From: Octopus sinensis
Taxonomy: Eukaryota
Reading direction: 5' to 3'
Length of the DNA: 64,000 nucleotides
Assembly: GCF_006345805.1 (NCBI RefSeq)
Contig: NC_043002.1
Location: 85,622,001 to 85,686,000, forward strand
Numbering within the stretch: position 1 is the stretch's first letter; the number at the start of each line of letters is the position of its first letter. Below the pieces are notes generated by a model. The model did no database searches and had not been told where the DNA came from. It saw nothing but the letters and a program-made list of their open reading frames with translations. Position numbers and translations under genes: made by a program. This document shows positions 700 through 63,440 of this stretch, piece by piece.

Positions 700-1003
700 A
701 TTACCAATGCTGGTGTGTTTACATCCCTGTAACTTAGCGCTTTGGCAAACGAGACCAACAGAATAAGTACTAAGCTTACAAAGAATACGTTCTAGGGTTG
801 ATTTACTTCCGCCGCTACCTCGTGCTAGCCGCAGTTTGTCATCTTTCGGGATTTTACGGGACGGACCACGTACTCCTATCGAGCGCCGGTATCTCGTGAA
901 CGCCTTCCGGCACCGGTGGCGGCTACGTCCACGCGTACGGGGGTCGACTAAAGGCAGTGCCCCAGCATGGCTACAGTCTAATGACTGAAACAAGTGAAAG
1001 ATA
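700..1003 (+). mobile_element. SINE family A, 3' half, interrupted by a GC-rich insert at 809-943
   Basis: Matches the 3' half of the other family A copies (gctggtgtgtttacatccc...gaataagtact...tcgactaaaggcagtgc...atgactgaaacaagt). Confidence 0.85.
809..943. other. Unidentified GC/CpG-rich insertion
   Basis: By hand count 86/135 G+C and 20 CpGs. Absent from the sister SINE copy at about 2140-2160. Confidence 0.85.
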
Positions 1004-1470
1004 TTATATTCCTAGAGCTTTCGTAGTTTCTCATCATTTTGGTTACATGAGTGTTGCATTCTATTAGATTTGAGCTTCAAAAGAAATAGGGATAAGGATG
1101 TTGTCAGCTAATAATTATAATAACGTGCATGGGAATGTAATAAAATGATTGTTATTCGCAAACAAACAGGACAGGATATTGCAGGGTAGTCAACTGTTTC
1201 TAAATATTGAACATAATTAGTTGTGTACATGCTTTAACAGAAACTATGATGGTTTCTGCTGTTTAATAAGATACATATTTGTTTGTTAAACTTCTGGGGT
1301 TTGACCTCTAATTGTGTGGGGAAAATGTTTTTATAGGCCAAAAACATTACTCTGAAGAGTAACATGTTGGAGTCTTACACAAATAAAATTTTCCTTGCTG
1401 TTATTGAAAACAGACATTAACTGAAGAAATGAACAAGCACATTATATTATATTATATTATATTATATTAA

Positions 1471-1983: not shown

Positions 1984-2276
1984 TGTGTGTGTGTGTGTGT
2001 GTGTATGTTTGTGTGTCTGTGTTTGTCCCTTTAACATCACTTGACAACCAATGCTGGTGTGTTTACATCCCTGTAACTTAGCACTTTGGCAAACAAGACC
2101 GACAGAATAAGTACTAGGCTTACAAAGAATACGTCCTAGGGTTGATTTGCTCGACTAAATGCAGTGCTCCAGCATGAGAGTATAAGAGTATAAGTCCTGG
2201 GTTCGATTTGACTAAAATTATTCAAGGTAGTACCCCAGCATGGCTACAGTCTAATGACTGAAACAAGTGAAAGATA
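1471..2276 (+). mobile_element. Two nested family A SINEs (inner copy about 1791-2176 inserted into the tail of the outer copy)
   Basis: Outer head at 1471 (gtgcaggcatggctgagtggtaag). A second head starts at 1791. The outer tail resumes at about 2187 (tcctgggttcgatttgac) and ends atgactgaaacaagtgaaag. Confidence 0.8.
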
Positions 2277-3226
2277 TATTTATTTGGAAGCTGAAAACTT
2301 CACTAATTTCAACTTTGAGTTTGTCATTTCCTGTCTTCATATGATTGTCCAAAGATAAATTTTCCAATAAGTATAATTCTTCCTTATACCTAACATCACT
2401 TAATAATACAAATGTTTTAATTTCTTTTTTCTTTCTTTCTTTCTTTCTTTCTTTCTAAGTATGTATCTATCTATATATACATATATATATGTACGTTTGT
2501 ATAAATATATATATGTGTTTTTGTATATATACATACATACATATACAAACACAATCTTACATGCATACATATATATTATATTATATTTATTAGATGCTGA
2601 AAATTTCACTAATCATTACTTTGAGTTTCTCATTTTCGATTTTCAGATGATTATTCAAAGATAAGAAAGTTTCCAATAAATATAAATTAGTAATTTTACA
2701 TTTCATATAGATTATTCTTTCCCCCCACCCTTGTTTGTGTAGTTTTCTTTTTTCTCTCTCTTTTTTTCTTGTTTTTGTTTTTGTACTTACCCCCCCCCCC
2801 CACCACCAGATACTTATGTCACATTTACTTACCAAAAGTATTGCTATTGATATCCTAATTGATCACTTCTCTTGAAGAAATACACAATCAATTGGCAGCT
2901 GTCTGTCATGTTTTATTTAACATAGATGATATCTACATACAGCCTTCCAACATAGTTCTTCGTTTATTTTGCTTCTTTTTATTTTTCTGCCTCAAAAACA
3001 AAAAATGTACAAGTCATATTTTCTTTCCAAACATTTCTTTGTGAGGCAACTTTAAGAGATGCCGGAACATTGGAAGATAGCATTTTTCTTATCAGCATTA
3101 AACTGAGCATTTTCCGAATTTTTTTAACAAAAACTTTCTCAAGCTCATATCATTGTAAGATGACAACATAGTCTACTAGATGTCTCTTCATGCCTTCATC
3201 ATTTGAAAGGCGGTGAGCTGGCAGAA

Positions 3227-3432
3227 ACATTAGCACACCGGGCGAAATACTTAGCGGTATTTTGTCTGTTGTTACGTTCTGAGTTCAAATTCCGCCGAAG
3301 TCGACTTTGCCTTTCATCCTTTCGGGGTCGATAAATCAAGTACCAGTTACGCACTGGGGTCGATGTAATCGACTTAATCCCTTTGTCTGTCCCCCTCTAT
3401 GTTTAGCCCCTTGTGGGTAGTAAAGAAATATA
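3227..3432 (+). mobile_element. SINE family B (tail type B1)
   Basis: ggcggtgagctggcagaa head; gagttcaaattcc B-box-like motif; cctttcatcctttcggggtcgataaa core; gccccttgtgggtagtaaagaaata tail. Confidence 0.85.
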
Positions 3433-8420: not shown

Positions 8421-9370
8421 GGCACAGGAGTGGCTGTGTGGTAAGTAGCTTGCTTACCAACCACATGGTTCCGGGTTCAGTCCCACTCGTAGCACCTTGG
8501 GCAAGTGCATTCTACTATAGCCTCGGGCTGATCAAAGCCTTGTGAGTAGATTTGGTAGATGGAAACTGAAAGAAGCCCATCGTATATATGTGTGTATGTA
8601 TATATATATATATATATGTATGTATGTGTGTGTATATATATATATATGTATGTGTGTGTATATGTTTATGTGTCTGTGTTTGTCCTCCCAAGATCGCTTG
8701 ACAACTGATGCTGGTGTGTTTACATCCCCATAACTTGGCAGTTCGGCGAAAGATAAAATAGAATAAGTATTAGGCTTACAAAGAATAAGTCCTGGGGTTG
8801 ATTTGTTCGACTAAAGGCAGTGCTCCAGCATGGCCGCAGTCAAATGATTGAAACAAGTAAAAGAGTATACACATATGCACACACATACTCATACATACTC
8901 ATTCACACACACACATACTCACACGTACACACATTTATACGTCATCCTTTATCTTTTGCTTGTTTAGTCATTGGATTGTGGCTACCTTGAGGTGCCTTAT
9001 TGGAGGGTTTCATCGAAGAAATTGACCCCAATACTTATGTTTGATTTTTAAATTTGATACTTGTTCTATTGGTCTCTATTGTCAAACCTCTAAGTTACAG
9101 AGATGTAAACAAACCAATGCCGGGTATCAAGTGGTGTGAGGGAGAGTACAAGTTCATACAGAAGCACACACACACCACACACACACACACACACACTCAC
9201 GCAAATATATATACAACAGGCTGCTACACAGTTTTTCTTTACCAACTTCTCTCACAAAGCTTTAGTCAGCCTGGGGCTAAAATAGAAGACTTGTCCAAGG
9301 TGCCACACAGTGGGACTGAACCCCAAACCATACTGTTGGGAAGCAAGCTTCTTAACTACACAGCCATATC
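8421..9370. mobile_element. Two family A SINEs (8421-8865 +; about 8945-9370 -)
   Basis: Family A head, core and tail motifs in opposite orientations. Confidence 0.85.
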
Positions 9371-11496: not shown

Positions 11497-11654
11497 ATAT
11501 ACAGGGAACTCTGTCAAAAGCTTTCTGATAGTCAATCTGTCCTATACTCTAACTATATTTCCCTATAGTCTTCAGATATACAGGGAACTCTGTCAAAAGC
11601 TTTCTGATAGTCAATCTGTCCTATGCTTTAACTACATTTCCCTATAGTCTTCAG
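11497..11654 (+). repeat. Two-copy 79-bp tandem duplication
   Basis: 11497-11575 and 11576-11654 are near-identical (atatacagggaactctgtcaaaagc...ccctatagtcttcag) with a few substitutions. Confidence 0.95.
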
Positions 11655-11991
11655 ATATGGTTTTACTGACCAGTCATCGTTTGTCATTGCCATTGCAACC
11701 ATTTAATAAACCTCATTATTATCATTGTTGTTGTTATTTTTGTGTTGATGTTCTATGCAATAATTCTTATCTCTTAGTACCTATCCTTTATGTTCACTCA
11801 CATTTACCTTTCATATTTTTGGTTTCCAAGTATCAAAACATAAGAAATAGACTGAATTGTTCCTTGTATTTTTGTACATAAAGGTTTTTTTTTTATTGAC
11901 TTATAGTCCCTCATTCACTCCAGTATCTTATATTTTGAACTCTCTGTCCAAACTTTGCAAATACCAACATGGAAACCAATAAATGCTATTA

Positions 11992-12225
11992 CCGGCGAGC
12001 TGGCCGAATCGTTAGCAGGCCGGGCGAAATGTGTAGCCATATTTCGTCTGCCATTACGTTCTGAGTTCAAATTCTGCCGAGGTCGACTTTGCCTTTCATC
12101 CTTTCGGGGTCGATAAATTAAGTACCAGCTACACACTGGGGTCGATGTAATCGACTTAATCCATTTGTCTGTCCTTGTTTGTCCCCTCTGTGTTTAGCCC
12201 CTTGTGAGTAGTAAAGAAATAGGTA
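11992..12225 (+). mobile_element. SINE family B (tail B1)
   Basis: Complete head, core and tail motifs as at 3227. Confidence 0.85.
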
Positions 12226-13261: not shown

Positions 13262-13615
13262 TATCATCATCATCATCATCATCATTTAGTGTCTGCTTTC
13301 CATGCTAGCATGGGTTGGACGGTTCAACTGGGGTCTGGGAAGCCAGATGGCTGCACCAGGCCAAGTCTGATCTGGCAATGTTTCTACGGCTGGATGCCCT
13401 TCCTAACGGCAACCACTCCGTGAGTGTAGTGGGTGCTTTTCACGTGCCAGATGAGGCTGGCAAACAGCCACGATCGGATGGTGCTTTTTACGTGCCACCA
13501 GCACGGGGGCGAGGCGAGGCTGGCAACGGCCATGATCGGATGGTGCTTTTTACATGTCACCGGCACGGAGGCCCGTCGGGTCGGCTCTGGCCACATTCAG
13601 ATGGTTCGCTTATGT
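13262..13615 (-). mobile_element. RTE 3' UTR-type element with about 3 internal GC-rich repeat units
   Basis: (CAT)n tail on plus; units gtgccacc..gcacgggg..gaggctggcaacgg..ggatggtgcttttac. Confidence 0.8.
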
Positions 13616-14124
13616 GCCACTGTTTAATTATATATGTTAAATTATTGATAGTGTTGTGTTGGTAACATCTGCAAATATATTATTCATTGTTTATAGATGT
13701 CTATTGAGGCATGACTAACACCTTCAATTTTCTCTAACACCAAAACAACACCAAATCGGAATTTACACAGAATATATGTTGTCATAGTGTGTCTAATTAT
13801 AAATCAGGTGTTATACATTTGGTACCTGTGATACACTTCCATTAGCCAGTACAAAATCATGAAATGGTATTTTGCATATGTAATGAGGATTTTGCGAACA
13901 TTTCTGTATGTGAAAATGTATATGTGTTATTAAAGGAGCTAATTTATAGTGTTCTCTATAGTTGATAGTTAGGAATATCAACTGCACACACACACGTGTG
14001 CATGCATGCATGCATGTGCACATACACATACACACATATAATGTAATAATGGATGATATATAATGTGCATGAAGAGTAAAATTTTCCTGAAAGAAAAATA
14101 TGAAGTTTTTTTTTTTGCATGTGT

Positions 14125-21454: not shown

Positions 21455-21811
21455 TTTACTTGTTTCAGTTATTTTACCATTGCCATGCTGGGGCACTACC
21501 TTTAATCGAACAAATCGACCCCAGGACTTATTCTTTGTAAGCCTAGTACTTATTCTATTGGTCTCTTCTGCTGAGCTGCTAGGTGACGGGGATGTAAACA
21601 CACCAACTTTGGTTGCCAAGCAATGGTGGGGGGGACAAACGCAGACACAAATAGTACATACATACATACATGCATACATACATACATACGTACGCACGTA
21701 CGACAGGCTTCTTTCAGTTTCTGTCTACCAAATCCACTCACAAGACTTTGGTCAGCCTGAGGCTACAGTAGAAGACACTTGTCCAAGGTTCCATGCAGTG
21801 GGATATGTATG

Positions 21812-21842
<31 letters not shown>

Positions 21843-22076
21843 ATATATAACATATATATATATATATACACATATATATATATATATACACATATATATA
21901 TATATAACACATCATATATATATATACACATATATATATATATATACACAATATATATATATACACATATATTATATATATACACATATATATAATATAT
22001 ATACACATATATATATATATATATTATACACACAATATATATATATATATACACATATAATATATATATACACAAT

Positions 22077-22130
<54 letters not shown>

Positions 22131-22372
22131 TATATATATGCACATATATATATATAATATATATATATATCTTTTAGCTTTTACTTGTTATAGTCATTTG
22201 ACTGTGGCCATGCTAAGGCACCACCTTGATGGGTTCAACTGAACAAATTGATACCAGTATGTATTATTTTCCCTTTTCTTTTTGAGCCTGGTGTTTATTG
22301 TAATGGTCTCTTTTGCTGAACTGCTATTTGGTGATGGAAGACAAGCATAAACACAGGCACACAAGTATATGC

Positions 22373-26560: not shown

Positions 26561-27110
26561 GTCCGAGTGCTGTTAGATCATGTGAACTCAATAGAGCTAT
26601 CCATACAGTTCACAATGGAAAAGGAAAAAGACAATCAGCTAGCATTCCTGGACATATTAATAACACGCACCAAGTATGGAATCAGGACATGTGTATACCT
26701 ATTTCTTTATTACCCACAAGGGGCTAAACACAGAGGGGACAAACAAGGACAGACATAGGTATTAAGTAGATTACATCAACCCCAGTGCGTAACTGGTACT
26801 TAATTTATCAACCCCGAAAGGATGAAAGGCAAAGTCGACCTCGGCAGAATTTGAACTCAGAACGTAACCCAGACGAAATACCGCTAAGCATTTCGCTCGG
26901 CGTGCTAACGTTTCTGCCAGCTCGCCGCCTTACATGTGTATACCGCAAGTTGACCTTCACTAGACGATACCTCAACTTCAGTTTCCACCAGCCATACAGT
27001 GTAAAGAGAGGGATTGCTCAGTGCCTAAAACATCGAGCAAAGAATATAAGTAGTGAGCATGATACCCACCATGAAGTCCTGATATGGACTTGTGATGCAT
27101 ATGAATGATA
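26560..27110 (+). mobile_element. Penelope-like RT C-terminal fragment interrupted by a family B SINE (26700-26931, -)
   Basis: IQFTMEKEKDNQLAFLDILITRT...CVYRKLTFTRRYLNFSFHQPYSVKRGIAQCLKHRAK; the SINE has a 13-bp TSD acatgtgtatacc (26687-26699 and 26932-26944). Confidence 0.85.
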
Positions 27111-32869: not shown

Positions 32870-34830
32870 CTACAAGTCTTCAAATGTGCAGTGTAGCCGG
32901 GAATAGTAAAACTGCTATTTCACTTAAATAGTGACAAGCAAGATATCTCTTCACTGGGGGACTGTATAGGGATGATGCACTTCTAGCTGTACATAGCCAG
33001 TCTAAAACTGCATTGAATAGATTGAGGAAATCCCTGTGAGATTTCTTAAAGGATTTCTTTAATCTTAACATTCTTTAATCTTTGATGTTAACTCCAGAGT
33101 GGTGAATTTCCTGGACATTACATTGTGTTTGGATACGGGTTTATACTACCCATTGAGTAAGCCAAACAAATCCATCTCATATATCAATGTATCGTCCAAT
33201 CACCCAAAATCCACTATAGATAACATCATTACCACTATTTCAATCAGAATCTCCAATTTATCCACAAATGTAGAAATTTTTTATCAACATGCACCAGTGA
33301 ACAACAATGCTCTAAAATTAAGCGGTTTTAAATCTAAAATCTCATATATACCTAACACAAGATTTAAAAACAAGGTGGTCGGAAAAAGTGCAATGCATTG
33401 CCTGACTGCAACCAAAATAAGTCATTAGAAACGTATTTAAAGAGGTTAGGAATAGGTATAAGAAGCGAAATAGTGGTAGTGGAGAGACAAGTAAAACCAA
33501 GAGTTCACATTCTAGAATAAGGGAAGTAATATGGTTCACCCCCCACCCTTTTTCTCTTAGAGTAAGAAATTTGCCAAGTTGTTTATTAGGATTCTGGAGG
33601 AGAACTTCCCAAAGACTACAACATTTGCAATAAGTCTTCTATCAAATTCTCTTACTCAGAAATGCTAAATTTGATCTCCATTATTGCATCTATAAATAGA
33701 AGCAAGTTAAATGGGCAAGGGCACTAGAGATGTTCTTCTGATGGAAACCCTGGTTCTGGGCAAGTAAGTTCTGATACGCCTAAGGTTAGTGATGCCAACA
33801 TTTTGCTCCCATCAGGTATATCAAACCCTAGTAATGAGTGAATGTGGGAAACCTGACAAGTACTGTTAGTAGTAGAAATAAGGTTAGGGATGGCCCTGGG
33901 AAATCATGTAATTATAGAAACCCTGGATTATGTCCCTTTGATGGGCTCTGTTTAATTACTAATGCAATTTATAAATGCATTGTTGAGGATGAGGATAATT
34001 TAGATAAGTTTTATATAGGTAGTACAGTAAATTTTAAGGCTAGGTATAGGGCCCACATGAGCTCATTTTCAAACAAAAAATACTGTAGCTCTACCACACT
34101 TTCATCTTATATACGCGATCTAAAGAGGAATAATAAGAGTTATTCTCTGGAATTGTTTATTTCGAGAGCCCCTCACTTCAGAGTAAATATAAATAAGTGT
34201 AAGTTGTGTGTAAAAGAATCCCTTGCCATCCTTAAGTCTTTTGGGCAAAAAACTTTGATTAAATTTACTGAGGTTGTCCCTTTTCACAACCATAGATTTT
34301 CATCCACCTTTTTGAAAGTATATAGAAATAAAATTAGATGTAATAAAATTGTTTAGCATTACAGGGATTTGAAACTGGTACGGTTAAATTTCTGTTAACT
34401 ACGGCCACCCAAGTGTTTAGCCATAGATTTTTTTTTTCTTTTAGAAAATTTGGACTGGTCCGTTGATAGGTTTTTCTTTTAAATTATACAAGTTTTTCAT
34501 GAAAAGTATAAGCTTTTCATAAAAAATGTTAATCTGTGAGTGTGTCCTGTTTCCTGTTTATCCTGATGAGGGGGTCATCACCGTGATGAACTTTATTGTA
34601 AATGAACTGCAGTGGTGAGCTCCCGGAATGGTCATAGATATATGTGAATGTTGAATTTGACATGTGGAGTCTGTTTATTATGAACTTTTGGATGTAGTTG
34701 TGTGAGGGGAGTAAAAGACTTTTTTTCAAGATGTATGTGAATTTGACCTGTGGAAGTCTATTTACTTATGAACTTTGGACGTACTTGTGTGAGGGAAGTA
34801 TAAGACTTTTTGCAAATATCAAAAAAATAA
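32870..34830 (+). mobile_element. Penelope-like element: RT C-terminus and GIY-YIG endonuclease, frameshifted
   Basis: VNFLDITLCLDTGLYYPLSKPNKSISYINVSSNHPKS (33099-); CPFDGLCL..AIYKC..FYIGSTVNFKARYRAHMSSF..CKLC (33838-34356); about 86-bp tandem repeat at about 34650-34815. Confidence 0.9.
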
Positions 34831-36602: not shown

Positions 36603-36729
36603 AAGAGGGAGGGAAATGTATGTGTGCATGCATGTGTGTGTGTGTGAGTGTGTGTGTGCATGCATGTGTGTTTGATAATAGCAAACAAAGTGTGTTAGTG
36701 AGGGGGAATAACACAAAGCAAATACACAC

Positions 36730-36772
36730 ACACATGCATACATATATACATGCTTACATACATATGTTTGCA

Positions 36773-36803
<31 letters not shown>

Positions 36804-36921
36804 GCTTGCATACATACATACATACATACATCATACATACTTGCTACATACATACATACATACATCATACAACATACATATCTTGCATACATACATACAT
36901 ACATACATACATATGCTTGCA

Positions 36922-36952
<31 letters not shown>

Positions 36953-36997
36953 GCTTGCATACATACATACATACATACATACATATGCTTGCATACA

Positions 36998-37028
<31 letters not shown>

Positions 37029-37114
37029 GCTTGCATACATACATACATACATACATACATATGCTTGCATACATACATACATACATACATACATAATACA
37101 TATGCTTGCATACA

Positions 37115-37145
<31 letters not shown>

Positions 37146-37190
37146 GCTTGCATACATACATACATACATACATACATATGCTTGCATACA

Positions 37191-37221
<31 letters not shown>

Positions 37222-37232
37222 GCTTGCATACA

Positions 37233-37263
<31 letters not shown>

Positions 37264-37278
37264 GCTTGCATACATACA

Positions 37279-37309
<31 letters not shown>

Positions 37310-37456
37310 GCTTGCATACATACATACATACATACATACATATGCTTGCATACATACATACATACATACATCATACATACATACATACATACATACATAT
37401 GCTTGCATACATACATACATACATATGCTTGCATACATACATACATCATACATACA

Positions 37457-37487
<31 letters not shown>

Positions 37488-37489
37488 GC

Positions 37490-37521
<32 letters not shown>

Positions 37522-37573
37522 GCTTGCATACATACATACATACATATGCTTGCATACATACATACATCATACA

Positions 37574-37604
<31 letters not shown>

Positions 37605-37606
37605 GC

Positions 37607-37642
<36 letters not shown>

Positions 37643-37694
37643 GCTTGCATACATACATACATACATATGCTTGCATACATACATACATCATACA

Positions 37695-37725
<31 letters not shown>

Positions 37726-37727
37726 GC

Positions 37728-37757
<30 letters not shown>
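36730..37757. repeat. Compound satellite (CATA)n punctuated by CATATGCTTG
   Basis: About 1 kb, with about 20 exact CATATGCTTG motifs plus variants by hand count; explains the long HTYI/MYVC pseudo-ORFs. Confidence 0.95.
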
Positions 37758-37758
<1 letters not shown>

Positions 37759-37945
37759 GCTGTTTTCATATACGAGCAAAACTAGAAAGAATCCTTGGAA
37801 TAAGTCATTGATGATGCAATCTGAGGCCCTGGTATGACTCTTAAGCCCAGCCAAAGATTTGCACATTCTATTGCATAATGCACAGCTGTGCAGGCTGGTA
37901 ACTATATGCATGAGAATACAGACATGAAACATAAAAATCCGCACA
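37758..37945 (-). mobile_element. RTE-type LINE extreme 3' end
   Basis: Minus frame HSCALCNRMCKSLAGLKSHTR resembles the RTE C-terminal Cys/His finger seen at 44440-44500. Confidence 0.6.
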
Positions 37946-38771
37946 TACATACATACATACATACATACATACATACATACATACATACATACATACATGC
38001 ATATATACATACATACATACCGTGTTGTTGATGTTGAAATTCCAATGAAGGAAACTTGGATCTAGGTTAGAAACCAGCTCTTTCTTTATTGGTAAGAAAT
38101 CTTGAAATATACTGAATAATTACATACACACACACATACATACATACATACATACATACATACATACATACATACATACATACATACATACATACATACA
38201 TACATACATACATACATACATACATACATACATACATACATACATACATACATACATGTATGCATGCATACATATGTACATATAAACATGCGTGCATGCA
38301 TACATATGTACATATACACATGCATGCATGTGTGCATACATGCATGCATGCATGCATATGTACATATAAACATGCATGCATGTGTGCATACATACACACA
38401 TATATACATGCAAGCATGCACACATACATACATGCATACATATATACATGCATACATACATATTGACAGACATGCATGCAGACACATAGACAGAATGGAA
38501 GAGGGAGAGAGAGAGAGAGGGAGAAAGAGAGGCAGATACATGTATCCATCCATTAATCATACATAAATAAATATGCATAAACATACATGCATGCATACAT
38601 ACAGATATTACATACAGACAAACTGGCAACCATAGATATGGACACAACTTAAGATATCATGGGAGTGTTATAGAGAAAGGTAGATTTATATAATAACTGA
38701 TTACTTTATAGCAATCAATGGCATCAAGTTTCCATCCAGTAGAGATCCTGATGTATTTAACTATAATAATG

Positions 38772-39094: not shown

Positions 39095-40540
39095 CAACAA
39101 CAACACATTCACCACTATCATTCACCACCATCATCATCACCACCTCTTTACCACCACCACCGTCAAGACAACCACCATCAATATAACCACCACCACCACC
39201 ACCATGACTATCACCGACAACAAAAATAACAATACCCAACACTAAAACCACCATCACTATCAGCACTACCACTACCAACAACAACAACAGCAACAACAGC
39301 ACCCAACAACAACAACAACAACACCATACACACTTGATGGCATTTACCATCCAATCTTGAATCTTCAAATACTCTCTTTAAACATGTACTTGGCTTTTAT
39401 TCAGCATCTTTTTCACTGAACTTCCTCTCAAACACAGTGATAAGGTCTTTCCCTTCCCCAACGTCAGCATCTCTTCTTCTAGCTTTCTCTCCCTTCTTCT
39501 CCCACCTCTTTGCTCTTTCTTTCTTCTCTTCTTTTTTTGTATTAACTGTGCTTCTCTTTACTCTCTTCCTCTCTTTATCTTTGTCCTTACCTTTCTCTCT
39601 ACCTCTTTTTCAATATCAATTATTTGATATTTATCTTTATCTTCTCCTCAATCAGTCTTTTTCTCTCTCTCTCTTCTTCTCTGCCTCTCTCTCCATTTTG
39701 CTCTCTGTCTATCTCCCTCTATTTATCTCCCTTTTTCTCTGTTTTTCTTTCTCTGCCGCTCTCTACATTTTTCTCTCTGTTTCTCCCTCTCTATTTCTCT
39801 CTCTTTTTCTCTGTCTCTCTCCCTTTTTCTCTGTCTCTCTCCTTCTCTGCCTCTCTCTCCATTTTTCTCTCTGTCTCTCCCTCTCTCTTTATCTCCCTGG
39901 TTCTCTCTGTCTCTCTTCTGCCTCTCTCCATTTTTCTCTCTGTCCCTCCCTCTCTATTTCACTCCATTTTTCTCTTTGTTTCACCTCTCTCCCTCTCTCC
40001 ATTTTTCTCTCTGTTTCTCCTCTCTCCCTCTCTCCATTTTTCTCTCTGTTTCTCCTCTCTCCCTCTCTCCATTTTTCTCTCTGTCTTTCCCTTGCTATTT
40101 TCCCCCTTATTTCTCTCTGTCTCTCCCTCTTTACCTTACTTCAGTTCTGTGTCTTTTTCTCACTTTCCTGTCTCTCTTTTCTATATCTTTCTTTCTCTCT
40201 ATCTCTCCCACCCTTTCTCTCTCTTCTCTCATTATCTCCCTCACACAATCTTTTACTCTCCTCTCTCCCTCACACAATCTTTTACCTCTCTCTCTCTTCT
40301 CTCCTTATCTCTCCTCCCTCTCCCTCACACAATCTTTTACTTTTCTCTTTCTTCTCTCCTTATCTCTCCTATTTTTCCCTCACACAATCTTTCACCTTTC
40401 TCTCTCTTTTCTCCTTATCTCTCCTCTCTCTTCTCTCCTTATCTCTCCTCTCTCTTCCTCACACAATCTTTCACCTTTCTCTCTCTTCTCTCCTTATCTC
40501 TCCTCTCTCCTCTTCAGACAATCTTTTACCTTTCTCTCTT
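39050..40540 (+). repeat. (CAC/CAA)n array (about 39050-39330) and about 1.1-kb polypyrimidine tract with internal repeats (about 39440-40540)
   Basis: Recurrent ccatttttctctctgt and ctcacacaatctttta motifs. Confidence 0.9.
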
Positions 40541-40963
40541 TAAGTAATCATTATCAATACTGTCACCATTATCATCATCATCACCTTCATTGCCATTATC
40601 GTTCATGTTGTCGTCATCACTTAGATTATCGTTGTCAAGGGACTATTTTCGTCATCGTCTTGGAGAATTCCATGCTTCTATCCATTTATATATCTATTTA
40701 TTTGTCTATCAATCAATTAATTTATCTATCTATCTTTATCTGTCTGCCAATGTATGAATGTGCCTGTCTGCCTGTGTATCTAACTATCCATCTAGCTGAG
40801 TGGCAATCTATTAGTGTAGCTATTTATCTGGCTATCTCTCTGTATGTCTATCTATTAGTCAGTTTTTCTACTGGTCTGTCTGTTTACCACATCTATGCAC
40901 AGACCTTCTTCTTCTTTCTCACTTTTCCTTTCTCTCCTCTTATGTGTGCAGACTTACCCTAGG

Positions 40964-41854: not shown

Positions 41855-42850
41855 CTTTAAATTGTTTCAGTCATTTGACTGCGGCCAAACAAAGAAATCA
41901 AGCCCAGGACTTATTCTTCGTATGCCTAGTACTTGTTCTATTGGTTTCTTTTGCCAAACTGCTAAGTTATGGAAGTGCAAACATACCTACACGGGTTGTC
42001 AAGTGATGTAGGGAAGGCAAACACAGGCACAAAGACACAAATGCATAAATACACGCGCACACACACACACACACACCACACACACACACACATAAATAAT
42101 ATATATATGTCACCAACAGTAAACAACATGAAATACGAAAACAAATGAGTTCAATATGCAAACAATGAGAGAAACAAATGGAAAACAGGACAAGTAACAC
42201 AAAGAACAACCCTTCATCAGTTGTCGGCTGTCTATCTACTCCTCATTACGAGCACTGAACAACAATATGTCCCACTGCATGGCACCTTGGGCAAGTGTCT
42301 TCTACTATAGCCTTCGTTTGACCAAAAGTTTGTGAGTGGATTTGGTGGATGGAAATTGAAAGAAGCCTGCAGTGTATGTGTGTTTTTGATTGTCTCACCA
42401 ACACCAACACCACCATCTGTTTCTTTGCTACCCACAAGGGGCTACACACAGAGGGGACAAACAAGGACAGACAAATGGATCAACTCGATTACAGAGACCC
42501 CAGTGCGTAACTGGTACTTAATTTATCGACCCCATAAGGACGAAAGGCAAAGTCGACCTCAGCGGAATTTGAACTCAGAACGTAAGGACAGACGAAATAC
42601 GGCTATGCATTTCGCCCGGCGTGCTAACGTTTCTGCCAGCTTGCCGCCTTACACCAACACCACCATCACCACCCAACAACCAGTGTTGATGTGCTTATGT
42701 CTCCATAACATAGCAGTTCAGCAAAAGAGACTGATAGAATAAGTATCAGGCTTAATAAAATGTACTGGGGTTGATTCGCTTGACTGAAATTTTTGAAGGG
42801 ACTGCCCCAGCATGACCACATTATAATGACTGAATCAAGTAAAAGATTTA
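41855..42850. mobile_element. Nested SINEs: family A (-, about 41855-42365), family B1 (-, about 42415-42650), family A 3' half (+, about 42680-42850)
   Basis: Family motifs. Confidence 0.7.
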
Positions 42851-43399: not shown

Positions 43400-43805
43400 A
43401 TATATATACACATATCATCATCATCATCGTTTAGCGTCCGTTCCATGCTAGCATGGGTTGGACGGTTCTACTGGGGTCTGTGAAGCCAGAAGGCTTCATC
43501 AGGCCTAGTCAAATCTGGCAGTGTTCTACGGCTGGATGCCCTTCCTAACACCAACCCACTCGAGAGTGTAGTGGGTGCTTTTTACGTGCCACCCGCACAG
43601 GTGCCAGACAGAGCTGGCAAACGGCCACGAACGGATGGTGCTTTTTATGTGCCACCGGCACGGGGGCCAGGCGAGGCTGGCAACGGACACGAAACGGGGT
43701 GGTGCTGGCAACGGTCGTGAAACGGAAGGTTCTCTTACATGCCACCAGCACTGGTAACACATCTGCAATTTCCATTGATCGATTTCCATTGATCGATTTC
43801 GATTC
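43400..43805 (-). mobile_element. RTE 3' UTR-type element with GC-rich repeat units
   Basis: Same structure as 13262-13615 and 45293-45955. Confidence 0.8.
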
Positions 43806-44592: not shown

Positions 44593-44656
<64 letters not shown>

Positions 44657-45292
44657 TATACTTATATATTATTTATATATATATGTATATATGTATATAT
44701 ATATAATGTGTGTATATATATATGTATATTATATATATATGTGTGTATATATATATGTATATTATATATATGTGTGTATATATATATGTATATGTATATA
44801 TATATATGTGTTATATATATGTATATGTATATATATATATGTGTATATATATATATATGTATATATATATATGTGTGTATATATATATATATGTATGTAT
44901 ATATATATGTATATATATGTATGTATAGGCAAGGAAAAATTATAAAATGGCAGAATGCTAAATTGAAGGTAAATTTTAATGAAAATGGGTGTAGGGAAAA
45001 TTATTAAAAATTTTTTTAAAATATTAACTCTAATTGGTTTTCGTCGCAATGCGACTTTTCAAGAATTGTAAGGTGAAAAGAAAATTTTTTTATAATTGAG
45101 GAGGGGAAAAAAAGAAAATTACATTGTTTTTTGCAAAAAAATAATAAACATATACAAAAGTTAAAAAATAGGTACACCGATACATTCTAAAGTCTTTGTG
45201 TATCCCAATTTCAATGATAGTCCTTGGAAAAGTTACCTTGGAGGATTAAGATCCATGTGAATAAATCCATGTGGTGTTTAATTCAGGATGTT

Positions 45293-46915
45293 TGTCATCA
45301 TCATCATCATCATCATCATTTAGTGTCCATTTTCCATGCTAGCATGGGTTGGACGGTTTAACTGGGGTCTGTGAAGCCGGAAGGCTTCATCAGGCCCAGT
45401 CAGATTTGGCAGTCTTTCTACGGCTGGATGCCCTTCCTAACGCCAACCACTCCATGAGTGTAGTGGGTGCTTTTTACGTGCCACCTGTACAGGTGCCAGA
45501 CAGAGCTGGCAAACGGCCACGAACAGATGGTGTTTTTTTCGTGCCACCGGCACGGGGGCCGGGCGAGGCTGGCAACGGACACAAGCGGATGGTGCTTTTA
45601 CATGCCAATGGCACGGGGGCCAGGCGAGGCTGGCAACGGACATGAACGGATGGTGCTTTTACGTGCTACCGGCACGGGGGCCAGACGAGGCTGGCAATGG
45701 ACACGAGGAGATGGTGCTTTTATGTGCCAACAGCACGGGGGGGGGCCAGGTGGGGCTGGCAACGGACACGAATGGATGGTGCTTTTACGTGCTACCAGCA
45801 CGGGGGCCAGGCGAGGCTGGCAACGGACACGAGCGGATGGTGCTTTTACATGCCAACGGCGCGGGGGCCAGGCGAGGCTGGCAACGGACAAACGATTGGA
45901 TGGTTCGCTTAACCACATCTGCAATTTCCACTGATGTTGATTTGGTTTGATTTTGACTGTTCTCACTGGTCTTGCCGGGTCTTCTCACGCACAGCATACT
46001 TCCATAGGTCTCGGTCTCTAGTCATTTCCTTGGTGAGACCTAAAGTTCGAAGGTCGTGCTTCACCACCTCGTCCCAGGTTTTCCTGGGTCTACCTCTTCC
46101 ACAGGTTCCCTCAACTGCTAGAGTGTGGCACTTTTGCACACAACTATCTTCACCCATTCTCGTCACATGCCCATACCAGCGCAGACGTCTCTCTTGCACA
46201 CCACAACTGATGCTTCTTAGGTTCACTTTTCTCTCAAGGTACTTACACTCTGTCGATTATGAACACTGACATTACACATCCATCGGAGCATACTGGCTTC
46301 ATTTCTTGCGAGCTTACGCATATCCTCAGCAGTCACAGCCCATGTTTCACTACCATATAGCATGGCTGTACGTACACATGCATCATACAGTCTGCCTTTT
46401 ACTCTGAGCGAGAGGCCTTTTGTCACCAGCAGAGGTAAGAGCTCCCACTACTGACTTGGTCACCAAGATAACGGAAGCTATCAACTACTTCTAGTTTTAC
46501 CCCCTGGAAAGTGACGGAAGTTGTTTTCTGCAGACTTTCAGATGTTAATGCTCCCGAGCATCTGCCACATACAAAAACCATCTTCCTAGTTAGCCTTCCT
46601 TTGACATTGCTGCACCTCTTATGTGTCCATAGCTTACACTTGGTGCATCTTATAGAGTTTCTACCTACACCTTTTCTACAGATCGAGCAAGGCCATCTAC
46701 CTGAAGGCGTTTGTGATTTGTCTACCTTCCTACTTATTACGACTTTGGTTTTAGCTAGATTGACTCTAAGGCCCTTTGATCCTAAACCTTGCTTCCACAC
46801 CTGAAGCTTCTCCTCTCAGTTCTGATAGTGACTCAGCAATTAGAGCAAGGTCATCAGCATATAGGAGCTCCCAGGGGCATCCTGCTGAATCTCCTTCCTC
46901 CGTTGTTGCCTGGAG
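45293..46915 (-). mobile_element. 5'-truncated RTE-clade LINE with Cys-rich insertion after the RT core and a repeat-containing 3' UTR
   Basis: WELLYADDLAL (about 46840-46880); WPCSICRKGVGRNSIRCTKCKLWTHKRC; MLYGSETW; RRLRWYGHV; GRGRPRKTW; (GAT)n tail; internal deletion at about 46445. Confidence 0.9.
45478..45905. repeat. 61-bp GC-rich minisatellite, about 7 units, in the RTE 3' UTR
   Basis: Units start at 45541, 45602, 45663, 45724, 45789 and 45850. Confidence 0.95.
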
Positions 46916-46964
46916 GACTATTATATATAATATATATATATATTTATATTATATATATTATATA

Positions 46965-47013
<49 letters not shown>

Positions 47014-47047
47014 ATATATATATATATAATATATATATATATATATA

Positions 47048-47094
<47 letters not shown>

Positions 47095-47144
47095 TATTAT
47101 ATATATATTTATATATATATATATATATTGTATATATATATATT

Positions 47145-47177
<33 letters not shown>

Positions 47178-47183
47178 ATATAA

Positions 47184-47228
<45 letters not shown>

Positions 47229-47240
47229 TTATATATATAT

Positions 47241-47275
<35 letters not shown>

Positions 47276-47382
47276 TTATATATATATATAATTTATATAT
47301 ATGATATTTATATATATATTTATATATATATATATATTTATAATATATATATATATATAATTATATATATCATATATATATA

Positions 47383-50025: not shown

Positions 50026-50028
<3 letters not shown>
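47383..50028 (+). mobile_element. CR1-clade LINE ORF2 (APE C-terminus plus RT), multiply frameshifted
   Basis: MGDFNLSCVDW; NYRPISLTSHIIKVFERVV; QHGFRNGRDCLTQLL; GVPQGTVLGPLLFIIYLND; IFADDSKL; (TATCAAAG)3 tail. Confidence 0.92.
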
Positions 50029-50061
<33 letters not shown>

Positions 50062-50078
50062 ATATATAATTTAATATG

Positions 50079-50109
<31 letters not shown>

Positions 50110-50405
50110 GTATATAGATAATATATATATGTATATATATATATATATATATATGTAGTATATATATATTTATATATGATTTATATATAATATATATGTA
50201 TATATATATATATATATAATGTATATAATATATATATATATATGTATTATATATATATATTTATATTATATATATATATGTATAATATGTATATGTATAT
50301 GTATATTATATATATATATATATGTATATATATGTATATGTATAGTATATATATATATATATATGTATATTAGTATATGTATATGTATTATATATATATA
50401 TATGT

Positions 50406-50436
<31 letters not shown>

Positions 50437-50508
50437 ATATGTATATGTATAATATATTGTATATGTATATATATATATATATGTGTATATGTTATGTATA
50501 TATATATG

Positions 50509-50539
<31 letters not shown>

Positions 50540-50554
50540 GTATAATATATATAG

Positions 50555-50587
<33 letters not shown>

Positions 50588-50824
50588 GTATATATATGTA
50601 TATGTATATATCTATATATATGTATTGTATCTATATATATGTATATGTTAATATTATATATGTATATGTATATATATATATGTATGTATATGTATATATA
50701 TATATATATGGATATATAATATGTATAGTATATATATATATATATATGTATATATATGTATAGTATATATATATATATGTTATATGTATATATATATTAT
50801 GTATATGTATATATATATATATGT

Positions 50825-50880
<56 letters not shown>

Positions 50881-51237
50881 GTAATGATATATATATATAT
50901 ATATGTATATTATGGATATATGTATATATATATTATATATATATGTATATATATATATATGTATATGTATATATATATATTTGTGTGTGTATATATTTAT
51001 ATGTATATGTATATATATATATGTGTGTGTATATATATATATATATGTGTGGGTATAATATATATGATATAATATATATAATATGTGTGTGTATATATAT
51101 ATATGTATATAATATAGTGTGTGTGTAATATATATATGTGTGTATATATATATGTGGTGTGTGTATATATATATATGTGTGTATATATATATGTATATAT
51201 ATACATATGTGTGTGTATATATATATATATATATATT
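50029..51237. repeat. About 1.2-kb degenerate (TA)n/(TATG)n array
   Basis: Directly visible; similar arrays at about 42850-43395, 44593-44930 and 46920-47380. Confidence 0.95.
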
Positions 51238-62984: not shown

Positions 62985-63440
62985 CATCATCGTTTAACGT
63001 CCACTTTCCATGTTAGCATGGGTTGGACATGTGACTGAGGGCTGGCAAACCAGAAGGCTGCACCAGGCTTCAGTCTTGATCTGGCAGAGTTTCTACAGCT
63101 GTATGCCCTTCCTAATGCCAACCACTCTGAGAGTGTAGTGGGTGCTTTTACGTGCCACCGTCACTGGGCCAATCAGGTGGCACTGGCAACGACCTTGCTC
63201 AAATCTTTTACACATGCCACCAGCACAGGTGCCAGTAAGGCAAAGCTGGTAATGATCCCGCTTGAATAGTGACTTTTACGTGCCACTGGCACGGAGGCCA
63301 GAAAGCTGTTCTGGCAACAATCACGCTTGGATGGTGCTCTTAATACCCTACTAGCACGGGGCTCAAGTGCCAGTAGTGCGACACTGGTAACGATCACGCT
63401 CAAATGGTGCCTTTTAAGTGCCACTGGCACGGAAGCCGTG
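62985..63440 (-). mobile_element. RTE 3' UTR-type element with diverged repeat units
   Basis: catcatcgtttaacgtccactttccatg tail; gtgccact..gcac..ggtgctttta units. Confidence 0.75.

What the first reader, a model, noticed from the sequence alone, without database searches (positions are those of the whole stretch)
809..943. Foreign-looking 135-nt CpG-rich insert inside a SINE tail
Seen: the family A tail elsewhere reads gttgatttgc|tcgactaaa (about 2140-2158; similar at about 8797-8814). Here 135 nt intervene, with 86 G+C (64%) and 20 CpGs, in a window that is otherwise AT-rich and mostly CpG-poor outside young retroelements. It matches no other repeat in the window. There is no clear TSD (at most TC), no poly-A tail and no TIR. 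It has a 7-bp inverted pair (tagccgc 826-832 / gcggcta 919-925) and is stop-free in one frame on each strand (minus: PRTRGRSRHRCRKAFTRYRRSIGVRGPSRKIPKDDKLRLARGSGGS). Inference: a recent capture of non-host DNA (filler at a break, or microbial/viral origin), a structured RNA cassette, or an assembly or synthetic artefact. I do not recognise it.
Basis: partly seen in the sequence, partly recalled or inferred. Interest (0 to 1): 0.8.

Follow-up and report, generated by a model that had tools for sequence, protein, structure and literature searches.

The report
Orphan CpG-rich insert in a SINE
A 135-base GC- and CpG-rich stretch really does interrupt one copy of a common short repeat, but it has no detectable relatives, RNA structure or coding signal, so it is most likely a young, functionless piece of DNA pasted in at a break; its source cannot be named with the data available here.

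Summary
Window 809-943 is 135 nt with 86 G+C and 20 CpGs (CpG o/e 1.46, against 0.34 for the window). It sits inside one SINE-like repeat copy, and seven other aligned copies are uninterrupted at that point. No repeat base is missing at the junction, and at most 1-2 bases are duplicated.

Every test for identity was negative:
- Rfam found nothing.
- Folding energy is no better than that of shuffled sequence.
- There is no tRNA and no codon periodicity. Two open frames is the number expected by chance.
- No Pfam family and no protein homologue turned up. The three hits of one exhaustive search are chance matches amplified by repeat proteins.
- There was no significant DNA match in phages, plasmids, E. 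coli, viral contigs, prokaryotic genomes or metagenomes.
- Nothing elsewhere in the window resembles it.

A weak, gapped inverted repeat joins its two ends, but its significance depends on the scoring.

Young SINE copies in the same window also keep CpG o/e above 1, so the CpG richness marks youth rather than foreignness. My best reading, at about 0.4, is a recent patch of host-derived DNA or cDNA captured at a break. A small mobile element, an assembly or synthetic artefact, and foreign DNA remain open. No eukaryotic genome or read data could be searched. Interest is low.

The parts
809..943 (.). The 135-nt GC/CpG-rich insert. It is 137 nt if T807-T808 are counted with it.
   Evidence: 86 G+C, 20 CpG, unique in the window, and absent from seven other aligned copies of the repeat.
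703..808 (+). Left piece of the interrupted, 5'-truncated SINE-like repeat copy
   Evidence: 703-807 aligns to 2047-2151 at 94.3% and to about 14 other copies. One search gives the alignment.
944..1004 (+). Right piece of the same repeat copy, resuming at TCGACTAAA
   Evidence: 944-969 aligns to 2151-2176, 951-1004 aligns to 2224-2277 at 96.3%, and there are about 14 other copies.
809..832 (+). Left arm of a weak, gapped terminal inverted repeat
   Evidence: 19 matches, 2 mismatches and 3 indels against the reverse complement of 919-943. P = 0.0005-0.07 depending on scoring.
919..943 (-). Right arm of the weak terminal inverted repeat. It contains the exact 7-bp arm 919-925, which pairs with 826-832.
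2047..2176 (+). Closest uninterrupted copy of the repeat, used as the 'empty site' comparator. It is not part of the insert.
   Evidence: it reads continuously through the point where the insert sits.

Best explanation
This is a real, evolutionarily recent insertion of a short piece of DNA (135-137 nt) with no function.

Mechanism I commit to: a break or nick arose in an old, 5'-truncated SINE-like repeat copy. It was sealed by end joining with a short DNA or cDNA fragment caught between the ends, a 'patch' or filler. That leaves no target-site duplication beyond 1-2 bases, no tail and no loss of target bases.

The fragment most likely came from elsewhere in the host genome: either a young, CpG-rich repeat family not represented in this 64-kb window, or a CpG-rich transcript.

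Shown: the insertion, its clean junctions, its uniqueness in the window, its intact CpGs, and the absence of RNA, coding or homology signals.

Inferred: the break-repair mechanism and the host origin of the fragment.
For: - **Clean interruption of one copy of a repeat.** The two pieces, compared apart, abut on the closest uninterrupted copy with one shared T. A join of two unrelated loci would not restore the repeat in register, so this is an insertion event.
- **No retroelement or transposon hallmarks.** There is no TSD of 5 bp or more, no poly(A) and no simple-repeat tail. This is the signature described for class 2 templated sequence insertions at repaired breaks (PMC5110952).
- **Youth.** CpG o/e is 1.46 and TpG+CpA o/e is 0.58, so there is no sign of CpG decay. 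The window overall has CpG o/e 0.34. The flanking repeat copy reads TG/CA at all four CpG sites shared by at least 3 of the other copies.
- **The composition is not alien to this genome.** The other CpG-dense patches of the window are young copies of a second SINE family with CpG o/e 1.2-1.6. A dispersed repeat with 60-61% GC also occurs in the window.
- **No function-type signal.** Rfam finds nothing, the fold z-scores are +0.33 and +0.46, there is no tRNA, no codon periodicity and no Pfam family.
- **No homologue.** Four of the six reading frames find no protein homologue.
- **Not copied from nearby sequence.** No local similarity anywhere in the window exceeds shuffles.
Against: - No donor sequence was found. 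No eukaryotic genome, transcriptome or read set could be searched, so host origin is inferred only.
- Break-repair patches usually show microdeletion or added bases. Here no target base is lost, which fits enzymatic integration or an in-silico or library artefact at least as well.
- The ends show a weak inverted repeat, which a random patch need not have.
- CpG together with TpA enrichment (20 and 8, against 13.7 and 4.2 expected; joint P = 0.0005 in shuffles) is unusual for natural DNA and is unexplained.
Confidence: 0.4

Rival explanations
1. It is a copy, or a truncated copy, of a low-copy host mobile element that integrated by its own or a partner's enzyme. Two forms are possible. One is a tiny element with terminal inverted repeats (MITE-like). 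The other is the extreme 3' end of a non-LTR retroelement of a kind that leaves little or no target duplication and no A-tail.
For: - In animal genomes most insertions of this size nested in older repeats are mobile elements (established knowledge).
- The target is preserved to the base, as in enzymatic integration.
- The first 24 and last 25 nt form a gapped inverted repeat that starts at both exact ends (P down to 0.0005).
- Its CpG-rich, undecayed composition resembles the youngest SINE copies of this window.
Against: - There is no second copy in 64 kb.
- The flanking duplication is at most T or TT/TC. This is not the TA, TTAA or 3-9 bp expected of known cut-and-paste superfamilies.
- The inverted repeat needs 3 indels and falls to P = 0.04-0.07 under stricter gap penalties.
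- There is no tail.
- No protein-level similarity to any element protein was found.
Confidence: 0.22
2. It is not biology of this genome. It would then be an artefact of sequencing or assembly, or a contaminant or synthetic sequence that entered the record.
For: - It is featureless, as random sequence would be. It has no structure beyond shuffles, no periodicity, no internal repeats of 8 nt or more, and no relative in any collection or in the full text of 8.3 million papers.
- The junction is perfectly clean.
- The overall dinucleotide deviation from a mononucleotide-shuffle model is only P = 0.04.
- No independent record of any ORF across it exists in the protein collection.
Against: - A chimeric read or misjoin would not resume the same repeat copy in register on the far side.
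- There is no match to E. coli or plasmid sequence.
- There are no Ns or gaps in the window.
- CpG enrichment (P = 0.011) and the CpG+TpA joint excess (P = 0.0005) argue against plain random letters.
Confidence: 0.2
3. It is foreign DNA from a bacterium, parasite, symbiont or virus, captured at a break. That would be a small horizontal acquisition.
For: - 64% GC and full CpG content in a 35.5% GC, CpG-depleted window.
- No similarity to anything else in the window.
Against: - blastn against phages, plasmids and E. coli gives only chance-level hits, with E >= 0.1 and at most 33% coverage.
- Six 18-20-mers spread across the insert gave no exact match in viral contigs apart from one 19-mer hit that extends to only 22 nt.
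- The 18-mer hits in prokaryotic genomes (11) and metagenomes (12) are about the number chance predicts, and they extend to at most 22 nt.
- The peptide-pattern scans of viral contigs and tblastn of plasmids, each run for the two fully open frames, found nothing.
- There is no codon-position GC periodicity of the kind GC-rich microbial genes show.
- TpA o/e of 1.89 is the opposite of the usual TpA depletion (the comparison is from general knowledge).
Confidence: 0.1
4. It is a small structured or functional RNA gene or cassette carried inside the repeat.
For: - The two ends can pair.
- The size is in the range of small RNAs.
Against: - No Rfam family matches at E <= 10 with permissive filters, whether on the insert alone or with flanks.
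- The minimum free energy is no better than shuffles on either strand (z +0.33 and +0.46).
- There is no tRNA.
- The bacterial-type promoter and terminator consensus scan found no site in the insert.
Confidence: 0.03

Closest known systems
Class 2 templated sequence insertions (TSI/TSIP): patches of distant genomic sequence or cDNA used to repair double-strand breaks (Onozawa et al. 2014, reviewed in PMC5110952)
   Same: A short insertion of unrelated sequence. It has no target-site duplication of 5 bp or more, no poly(A) signal or tract, and is not derived from nearby sequence.
   Different: No donor locus has been identified. The junctions show no microdeletion, and any microhomology is at most 1-2 bases. 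The cited review describes human polymorphisms and induced breaks in cultured human cells, not this genome.
Filler DNA, or capture of extrachromosomal fragments (mitochondrial, plasmid, retroelement cDNA) at breaks by non-homologous end joining (PMC2567098, PMC1976456; titles and abstracts seen)
   Same: The outcome is the same: foreign-to-the-site DNA sealed into a break with no transposition hallmarks.
   Different: The composition (64% GC) does not fit the AT-rich mitochondrial DNA expected of such a host (my general knowledge, not tested by sequence). No plasmid, phage or bacterial source was found.
Miniature inverted-repeat transposable elements (MITEs)
   Same: The size is about 135 bp, the ends show inverted complementarity, and the target is preserved.
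   Different: The inverted repeat is gapped and statistically fragile. There is no proper target-site duplication. There is no second copy in the window.
Severely 5'-truncated non-LTR retroelement insertions
   Same: A short nested insert in an older repeat, young by its CpG content.
   Different: There is no A-tail or simple-repeat tail and no TSD. It has no similarity to either SINE family or to any other sequence in the window.

Membership tests
Class 2 templated sequence insertion (break-repair patch) | No target-site duplication of 5 bp or more at the junctions | tested here: met
   The pieces, compared apart, overlap by one T on the uninterrupted copy. The criterion comes from PMC5110952.
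Class 2 templated sequence insertion (break-repair patch) | No poly(A) tract or cryptic poly(A) signal at the insert's end | tested here: met
   The insert ends ...ACGGGGG on the + strand and ...GCGGCGG on the - strand. There is no A or T run and no AATAAA.
Class 2 templated sequence insertion (break-repair patch) | End-joining scars: microdeletion, microhomology or non-templated bases | tested here: inconclusive
   There is no deletion. One or two bases (T, or TT/TC) could be microhomology or added bases. Two substitutions lie within 4 nt of the left junction relative to the closest copy.
Class 2 templated sequence insertion (break-repair patch) | An intact donor locus elsewhere in the same genome | not testable with these tools
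   No eukaryotic genome collection is searchable. There is no donor in the 64-kb window.
MITE / cut-and-paste DNA transposon | Terminal inverted repeats | tested here: inconclusive
   809-832 against 919-943: 19 matches, 2 mismatches, 3 indels. P ranges from 0.0005 to 0.07 with scoring.
MITE / cut-and-paste DNA transposon | Target-site duplication of superfamily-specific length and sequence | tested here: not met
   The flanks read ...ACTT | insert | TCGAC.... At most T, or TT/TC, is duplicated. There is no TA, TTAA or longer duplication.
MITE / cut-and-paste DNA transposon | Multiple dispersed copies | tested here: inconclusive
   There is none in the window.
Non-LTR retroelement insertion (LINE/SINE) | 3' tail (A-rich or simple repeat) and flanking duplication | tested here: not met
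   There is no tail on either strand and no duplication above 2 bp.
Non-LTR retroelement insertion (LINE/SINE) | Similarity to a known element or its proteins; a tRNA-like head for SINEs | tested here: not met
   There is no tRNA, no Pfam family and no protein homologue. It has no similarity to the two SINE families of the window.
Described structured RNA family (Rfam 15) | Covariance-model match and thermodynamic stability above background | tested here: not met
   No match reaches a gathering score. The best E-value is 3, to a CRISPR-repeat model at 14 bits. Fold z-scores are +0.33 and +0.46.
Horizontally acquired microbial or viral DNA | Significant similarity to microbial or viral sequence at DNA or protein level | tested here: not met
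   Only chance-level matches were found. The prokaryotic genome and metagenome scans each used a single 18-mer seed, so diverged sources could be missed.
Horizontally acquired microbial or viral DNA | Coding signal (codon-position GC periodicity, a real open frame) | tested here: not met
   GC by codon position is 0.58-0.69 in every frame. Two open frames is about the number expected by chance.

The most novel reading that the evidence does not exclude
The insert is the first sighting of a small, recently active mobile element with GC-rich imperfect terminal inverted repeats and almost no target duplication, or else a very recent capture of DNA from an unsequenced associate (parasite, symbiont or virus) of the host. 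In either case it would be a family with no relative in the collections searched here.
Probability: 0.12. Interest if true: 0.45.

Novelty: new member of a known kind. Interest (0 to 1): 0.17.

Why it matters
If it is a break-repair patch or a stray repeat fragment, it matters little. It would be one more example of how repeats accumulate nested junk, though a dated one because its CpGs are intact. It could serve as a presence/absence marker between individuals or species.

It would matter more in two cases. If a genome-wide search showed a family of such units, that would be a new small mobile element. If a microbial or viral donor turned up, that would be a fresh horizontal capture.

The practical lesson for the scan is that CpG richness in this genome marks young insertions in general, not foreign DNA.

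Tried and rejected
- **Rfam.** I ran the whole window at gathering thresholds, then the insert with flanks and the insert alone at E <= 10. Only noise came back.
- **RNA folding of both strands.** Neither is more stable than shuffles.
- **tRNA scan and bacterial-type promoter/terminator scan.** Neither found anything in the insert.
- **Search within the window.** blastn-short and Smith-Waterman alignment against shuffles found nothing. This includes the GC-rich 61-bp minisatellite repeat, which shares a few 7-mers with the insert by eye but scores below the shuffle mean.
- **blastn against phages, plasmids and E. coli genomes.** Matches were chance-level or absent.
- **Exact 18-20-mer scans.**
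  - Six seeds went to viral contigs.
  - One seed each went to prokaryotic genomes and metagenomes.
  - Hits occurred at the number chance predicts and extended to at most 22 nt.
- **Protein level.**
  - Pfam on segments of all six frames found nothing.
  - The word-indexed search of 5.8 billion proteins found nothing for the -0, +0 and +1 frames.
  - Exhaustive HMMER on the +2 frame gave three hits. Each is a repeat protein, unrelated to the other two.
  - The best of those scores 78.7 bits only by summing 5 repeats. A single stretch scores 31 bits, which by my calculation is expected about 4,000 times by chance in that library.
  - I reject these three hits as chance.
- **Peptide-pattern scans of viral contigs and tblastn of plasmids.** Both open frames gave nothing.
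- **Exact look-ups.** I looked up the 136-aa ORF spanning both junctions and nine other window ORFs, hoping to find independent assemblies. None is on record.
- **Full-text literature search** for six 18-20-mers, both strands. No paper holds any of them.
- **Restriction-site clustering as a sign of a cloning vector.** Four 6-bp palindromes were seen against 2.4 expected (P = 0.23), so I rejected this.
- **Helitron and piggyBac-type ends and insertion sites.** I considered these by eye on the sequence and rejected them. The flanks are not A|T or TTAA and the ends do not fit.
- **The CpG-decay comparison** is only partial, because the aligner misplaced part of the right flank.

Full report
**1. 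The observation**

Window 809-943 is 135 nt with 86 G+C (63.7%), 20 CpG and 12 GpC, giving CpG o/e 1.46. The window as a whole has 35.5% GC and CpG o/e 0.34. No other 135-nt stretch has more than 14 CpGs. The CpG count exceeds mononucleotide shuffles (mean 13.7, sd 2.5, P = 0.011).

The stretch lies inside a copy of a short dispersed repeat. The 119 nt to its left and the 67 nt to its right each find about 15 other copies in the window, on both strands. In an alignment with seven of them the site is continuous in every other copy.

I compared the two pieces apart, without closing the gap. The left piece 703-807 aligns to 2047-2151 (94.3%). The right piece 944-969 aligns to 2151-2176, and 951-1004 aligns to 2224-2277 (96.3%) of the closest copy. 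The two pieces therefore abut on the uninterrupted copy, sharing one T. No repeat base is missing, and at most 1-2 bases (T, or TT/TC with a mismatch) are duplicated.

Both pieces resemble the same neighbour best, so they belong to one copy that resumes in register. This is an insertion, not a join of two loci.

The 7-bp inverted pair is real. The two open frames and the quoted peptide are also real. From the base counts, about 1.9 of six frames would be open by chance, so the open frames carry no weight.

**2. What it is not**

*RNA.*
- Rfam 15 gives nothing at gathering scores in the whole window. Only noise appears at E <= 10 on the insert, with or without flanks. The best match is 14 bits to a CRISPR-repeat model.
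- The minimum free energies (-47.1 and -45.3 kcal/mol) are no better than dinucleotide shuffles (z = +0.33 and +0.46).
- ARAGORN finds no tRNA-like unit.

*Coding.*
- GC by codon position is flat in all frames, between 0.58 and 0.69.
- Pfam finds nothing in any frame.
- The -0, +0 and +1 frames find no homologue among 5.8 billion proteins.

*The apparent protein hits.* The exhaustive HMMER search with the +2 frame returned three hits. All three are internally repetitive proteins that are unrelated to one another. The best scores 78.7 bits only because five near-identical repeats each add a match. A single match scores 31.2 bits. For a 40-residue query against 2.36e11 residues, I calculate that such a match is expected about 4,000 times by chance. 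I treat these hits as chance.

*Microbial or viral DNA.*
- blastn against 50,697 phage records and 72,556 plasmids gave only short hits at E >= 0.1. The search of 5,426 E. coli genomes gave none.
- Six 18-20-mers spread over the insert gave no viral-contig match, apart from one 19-mer hit that extends to 22 nt.
- One 18-mer gave 11 hits in 596 Gb of prokaryotic genomes, where about 17 are expected by chance for equal base frequencies (my calculation). It gave 12 hits in metagenomes. None extends beyond 22 nt.
- Peptide-pattern scans of viral contigs and tblastn of plasmids with both open frames found nothing.

*Known laboratory or published sequence.* No paper in the full-text library holds any of six 18-20-mers. 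Six-base palindromes are not enriched (4 against 2.4 expected, P = 0.23).

*Locally templated DNA.* The best local alignment to the rest of the window scores 23, against a shuffle mean of 24.4.

**3. What the sequence does show**

*It is undecayed.* CpG o/e is 1.46 with TpG+CpA o/e 0.58, the opposite of methylation decay. The window has TpG+CpA o/e 1.32. In the flanks, all four CpG sites shared by at least 3 of the other copies read TG or CA. The flanks hold 4 CpGs in 176 nt. That alignment is imperfect on the right flank. Some of these states are also shared with the closest copy, so they may be inherited. Either way, the insert is young relative to the decay that shaped the window, or it is unmethylated.

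*Its composition is not unique to foreign DNA here.* The other CpG-dense patches of the window (3237-3373, 11978-12127, 26793-26976, 42495-42661) are copies of a second SINE-like family, 85-91% identical to each other. Their CpG o/e is 1.2-1.6 and their TpG+CpA o/e is 0.70-0.84. A dispersed repeat with 60-61% GC is also present. High CpG therefore marks recent arrivals in this genome in general.

*The ends are weakly complementary.* 809-832 and the reverse complement of 919-943 align from the first base of each, with 19 matches, 2 mismatches and 3 indels. Against shuffles, P = 0.0005-0.02 with lenient gap costs. It rises to 0.04-0.07 with strict ones, and to as much as 0.68 when the arms are cut to 20 nt. 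I found this after looking at the fold, so I count it as a hint only.

*An unexplained oddity.* CpG and TpA are both enriched (20 and 8, against 13.7 and 4.2), and TpG is depleted (4 against 9.1). The joint P is 0.0005. The overall dinucleotide statistic is only P = 0.04.

**4. Mechanism**

The anatomy is as follows:
- a clean interruption;
- no duplication above 2 bp;
- no tail;
- no local template;
- no partner copies in the window.

This is the anatomy described for class 2 templated sequence insertions: patches of distant sequence or cDNA sealed into a double-strand break by end joining (PMC5110952). I commit to that reading with a host-derived source, at about 0.4.

Against it, no donor is known, and the complete preservation of the target is more typical of enzymatic integration.

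The rivals rank as follows.
- **Small or truncated mobile element (0.22).** Base rates, the clean target and the weak terminal inverted repeat favour it. The missing target duplication, missing tail and missing second copy count against it.
- **Artefact or synthetic sequence (0.2).** Its featurelessness and the lack of any independent record favour it. The in-register resumption of the repeat and the non-random dinucleotides count against it.
- **Foreign DNA (0.1).** Composition alone favours it, and nothing in the collections searched supports it.
- **RNA gene (0.03).**

**5. Limits**

No eukaryotic genome, transcriptome or read archive can be searched by DNA with these tools. The protein collection evidently holds no ORFs from this kind of non-coding DNA, since even the repeat-encoded part of the 136-aa ORF found nothing.

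Three things therefore could not be measured: copy number in the host genome, the donor, and read support. These are the three things that would settle the matter.

**6. Verdict**

This is a real-looking, young, orphan insertion of unknown source with no sign of function. It is an instance of a known kind of event. Interest is low (0.17) unless a genome-wide search reveals a family or a non-host donor.

Noticed in passing
window 2141-2277: The closest uninterrupted copy of the same repeat carries its own irregularity. After ...ccagcatg at about 2176, a stretch of about 50 nt repeats part of the repeat's tail in diverged form (...agtcctgggttcgatttgactaaa...) before the tail resumes at 2224. This looks like a partial internal duplication.
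   Followed up: partly
window 3204-3392, 11993-12179, 26742-26934, 42469-42653 and about 4 more: A second SINE-like family, 85-91% identical between copies, accounts for the CpG-dense patches of the window (CpG o/e 1.2-1.6). Young insertions in this genome keep their CpGs.
   Followed up: partly
window 13441-13622, 43574-43754, 45466-45904, 63141-63432: A GC-rich (60-61%) dispersed repeat built of 61-bp tandem units occurs in four places in the window, with 6.9 units at 45466-45890. It is unrelated to the insert.
   Followed up: partly
window 33838-34356 (+): A 172-aa ORF has a weak, sub-threshold match to the GIY-YIG nuclease domain (E = 0.003, 18.2 bits against a cut-off of 22.6). It may be a remnant of a Penelope-like retroelement. 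I did not pursue it.
   Followed up: no
window 36722-38462 and 39808-40569: Long (ATAC)n arrays of about 1 kb and 340 bp lie next to CT-rich 35/70-bp and 134/189-bp tandem arrays. These explain the strong negative GC skew at 38-42 kb and the many overlapping spurious ORFs there.
   Followed up: no
window 50026-51236; also 21803-22170, 44595-44927, 46922-47382: Very long (TA)n/(AT)n microsatellites, up to 1.2 kb, explain the 18.7% GC bin at 50-52 kb.
   Followed up: no
window 11497-11658: A 79-bp unit is present as 2.1 tandem copies at 96% identity, which suggests a recent tandem duplication.
   Followed up: no
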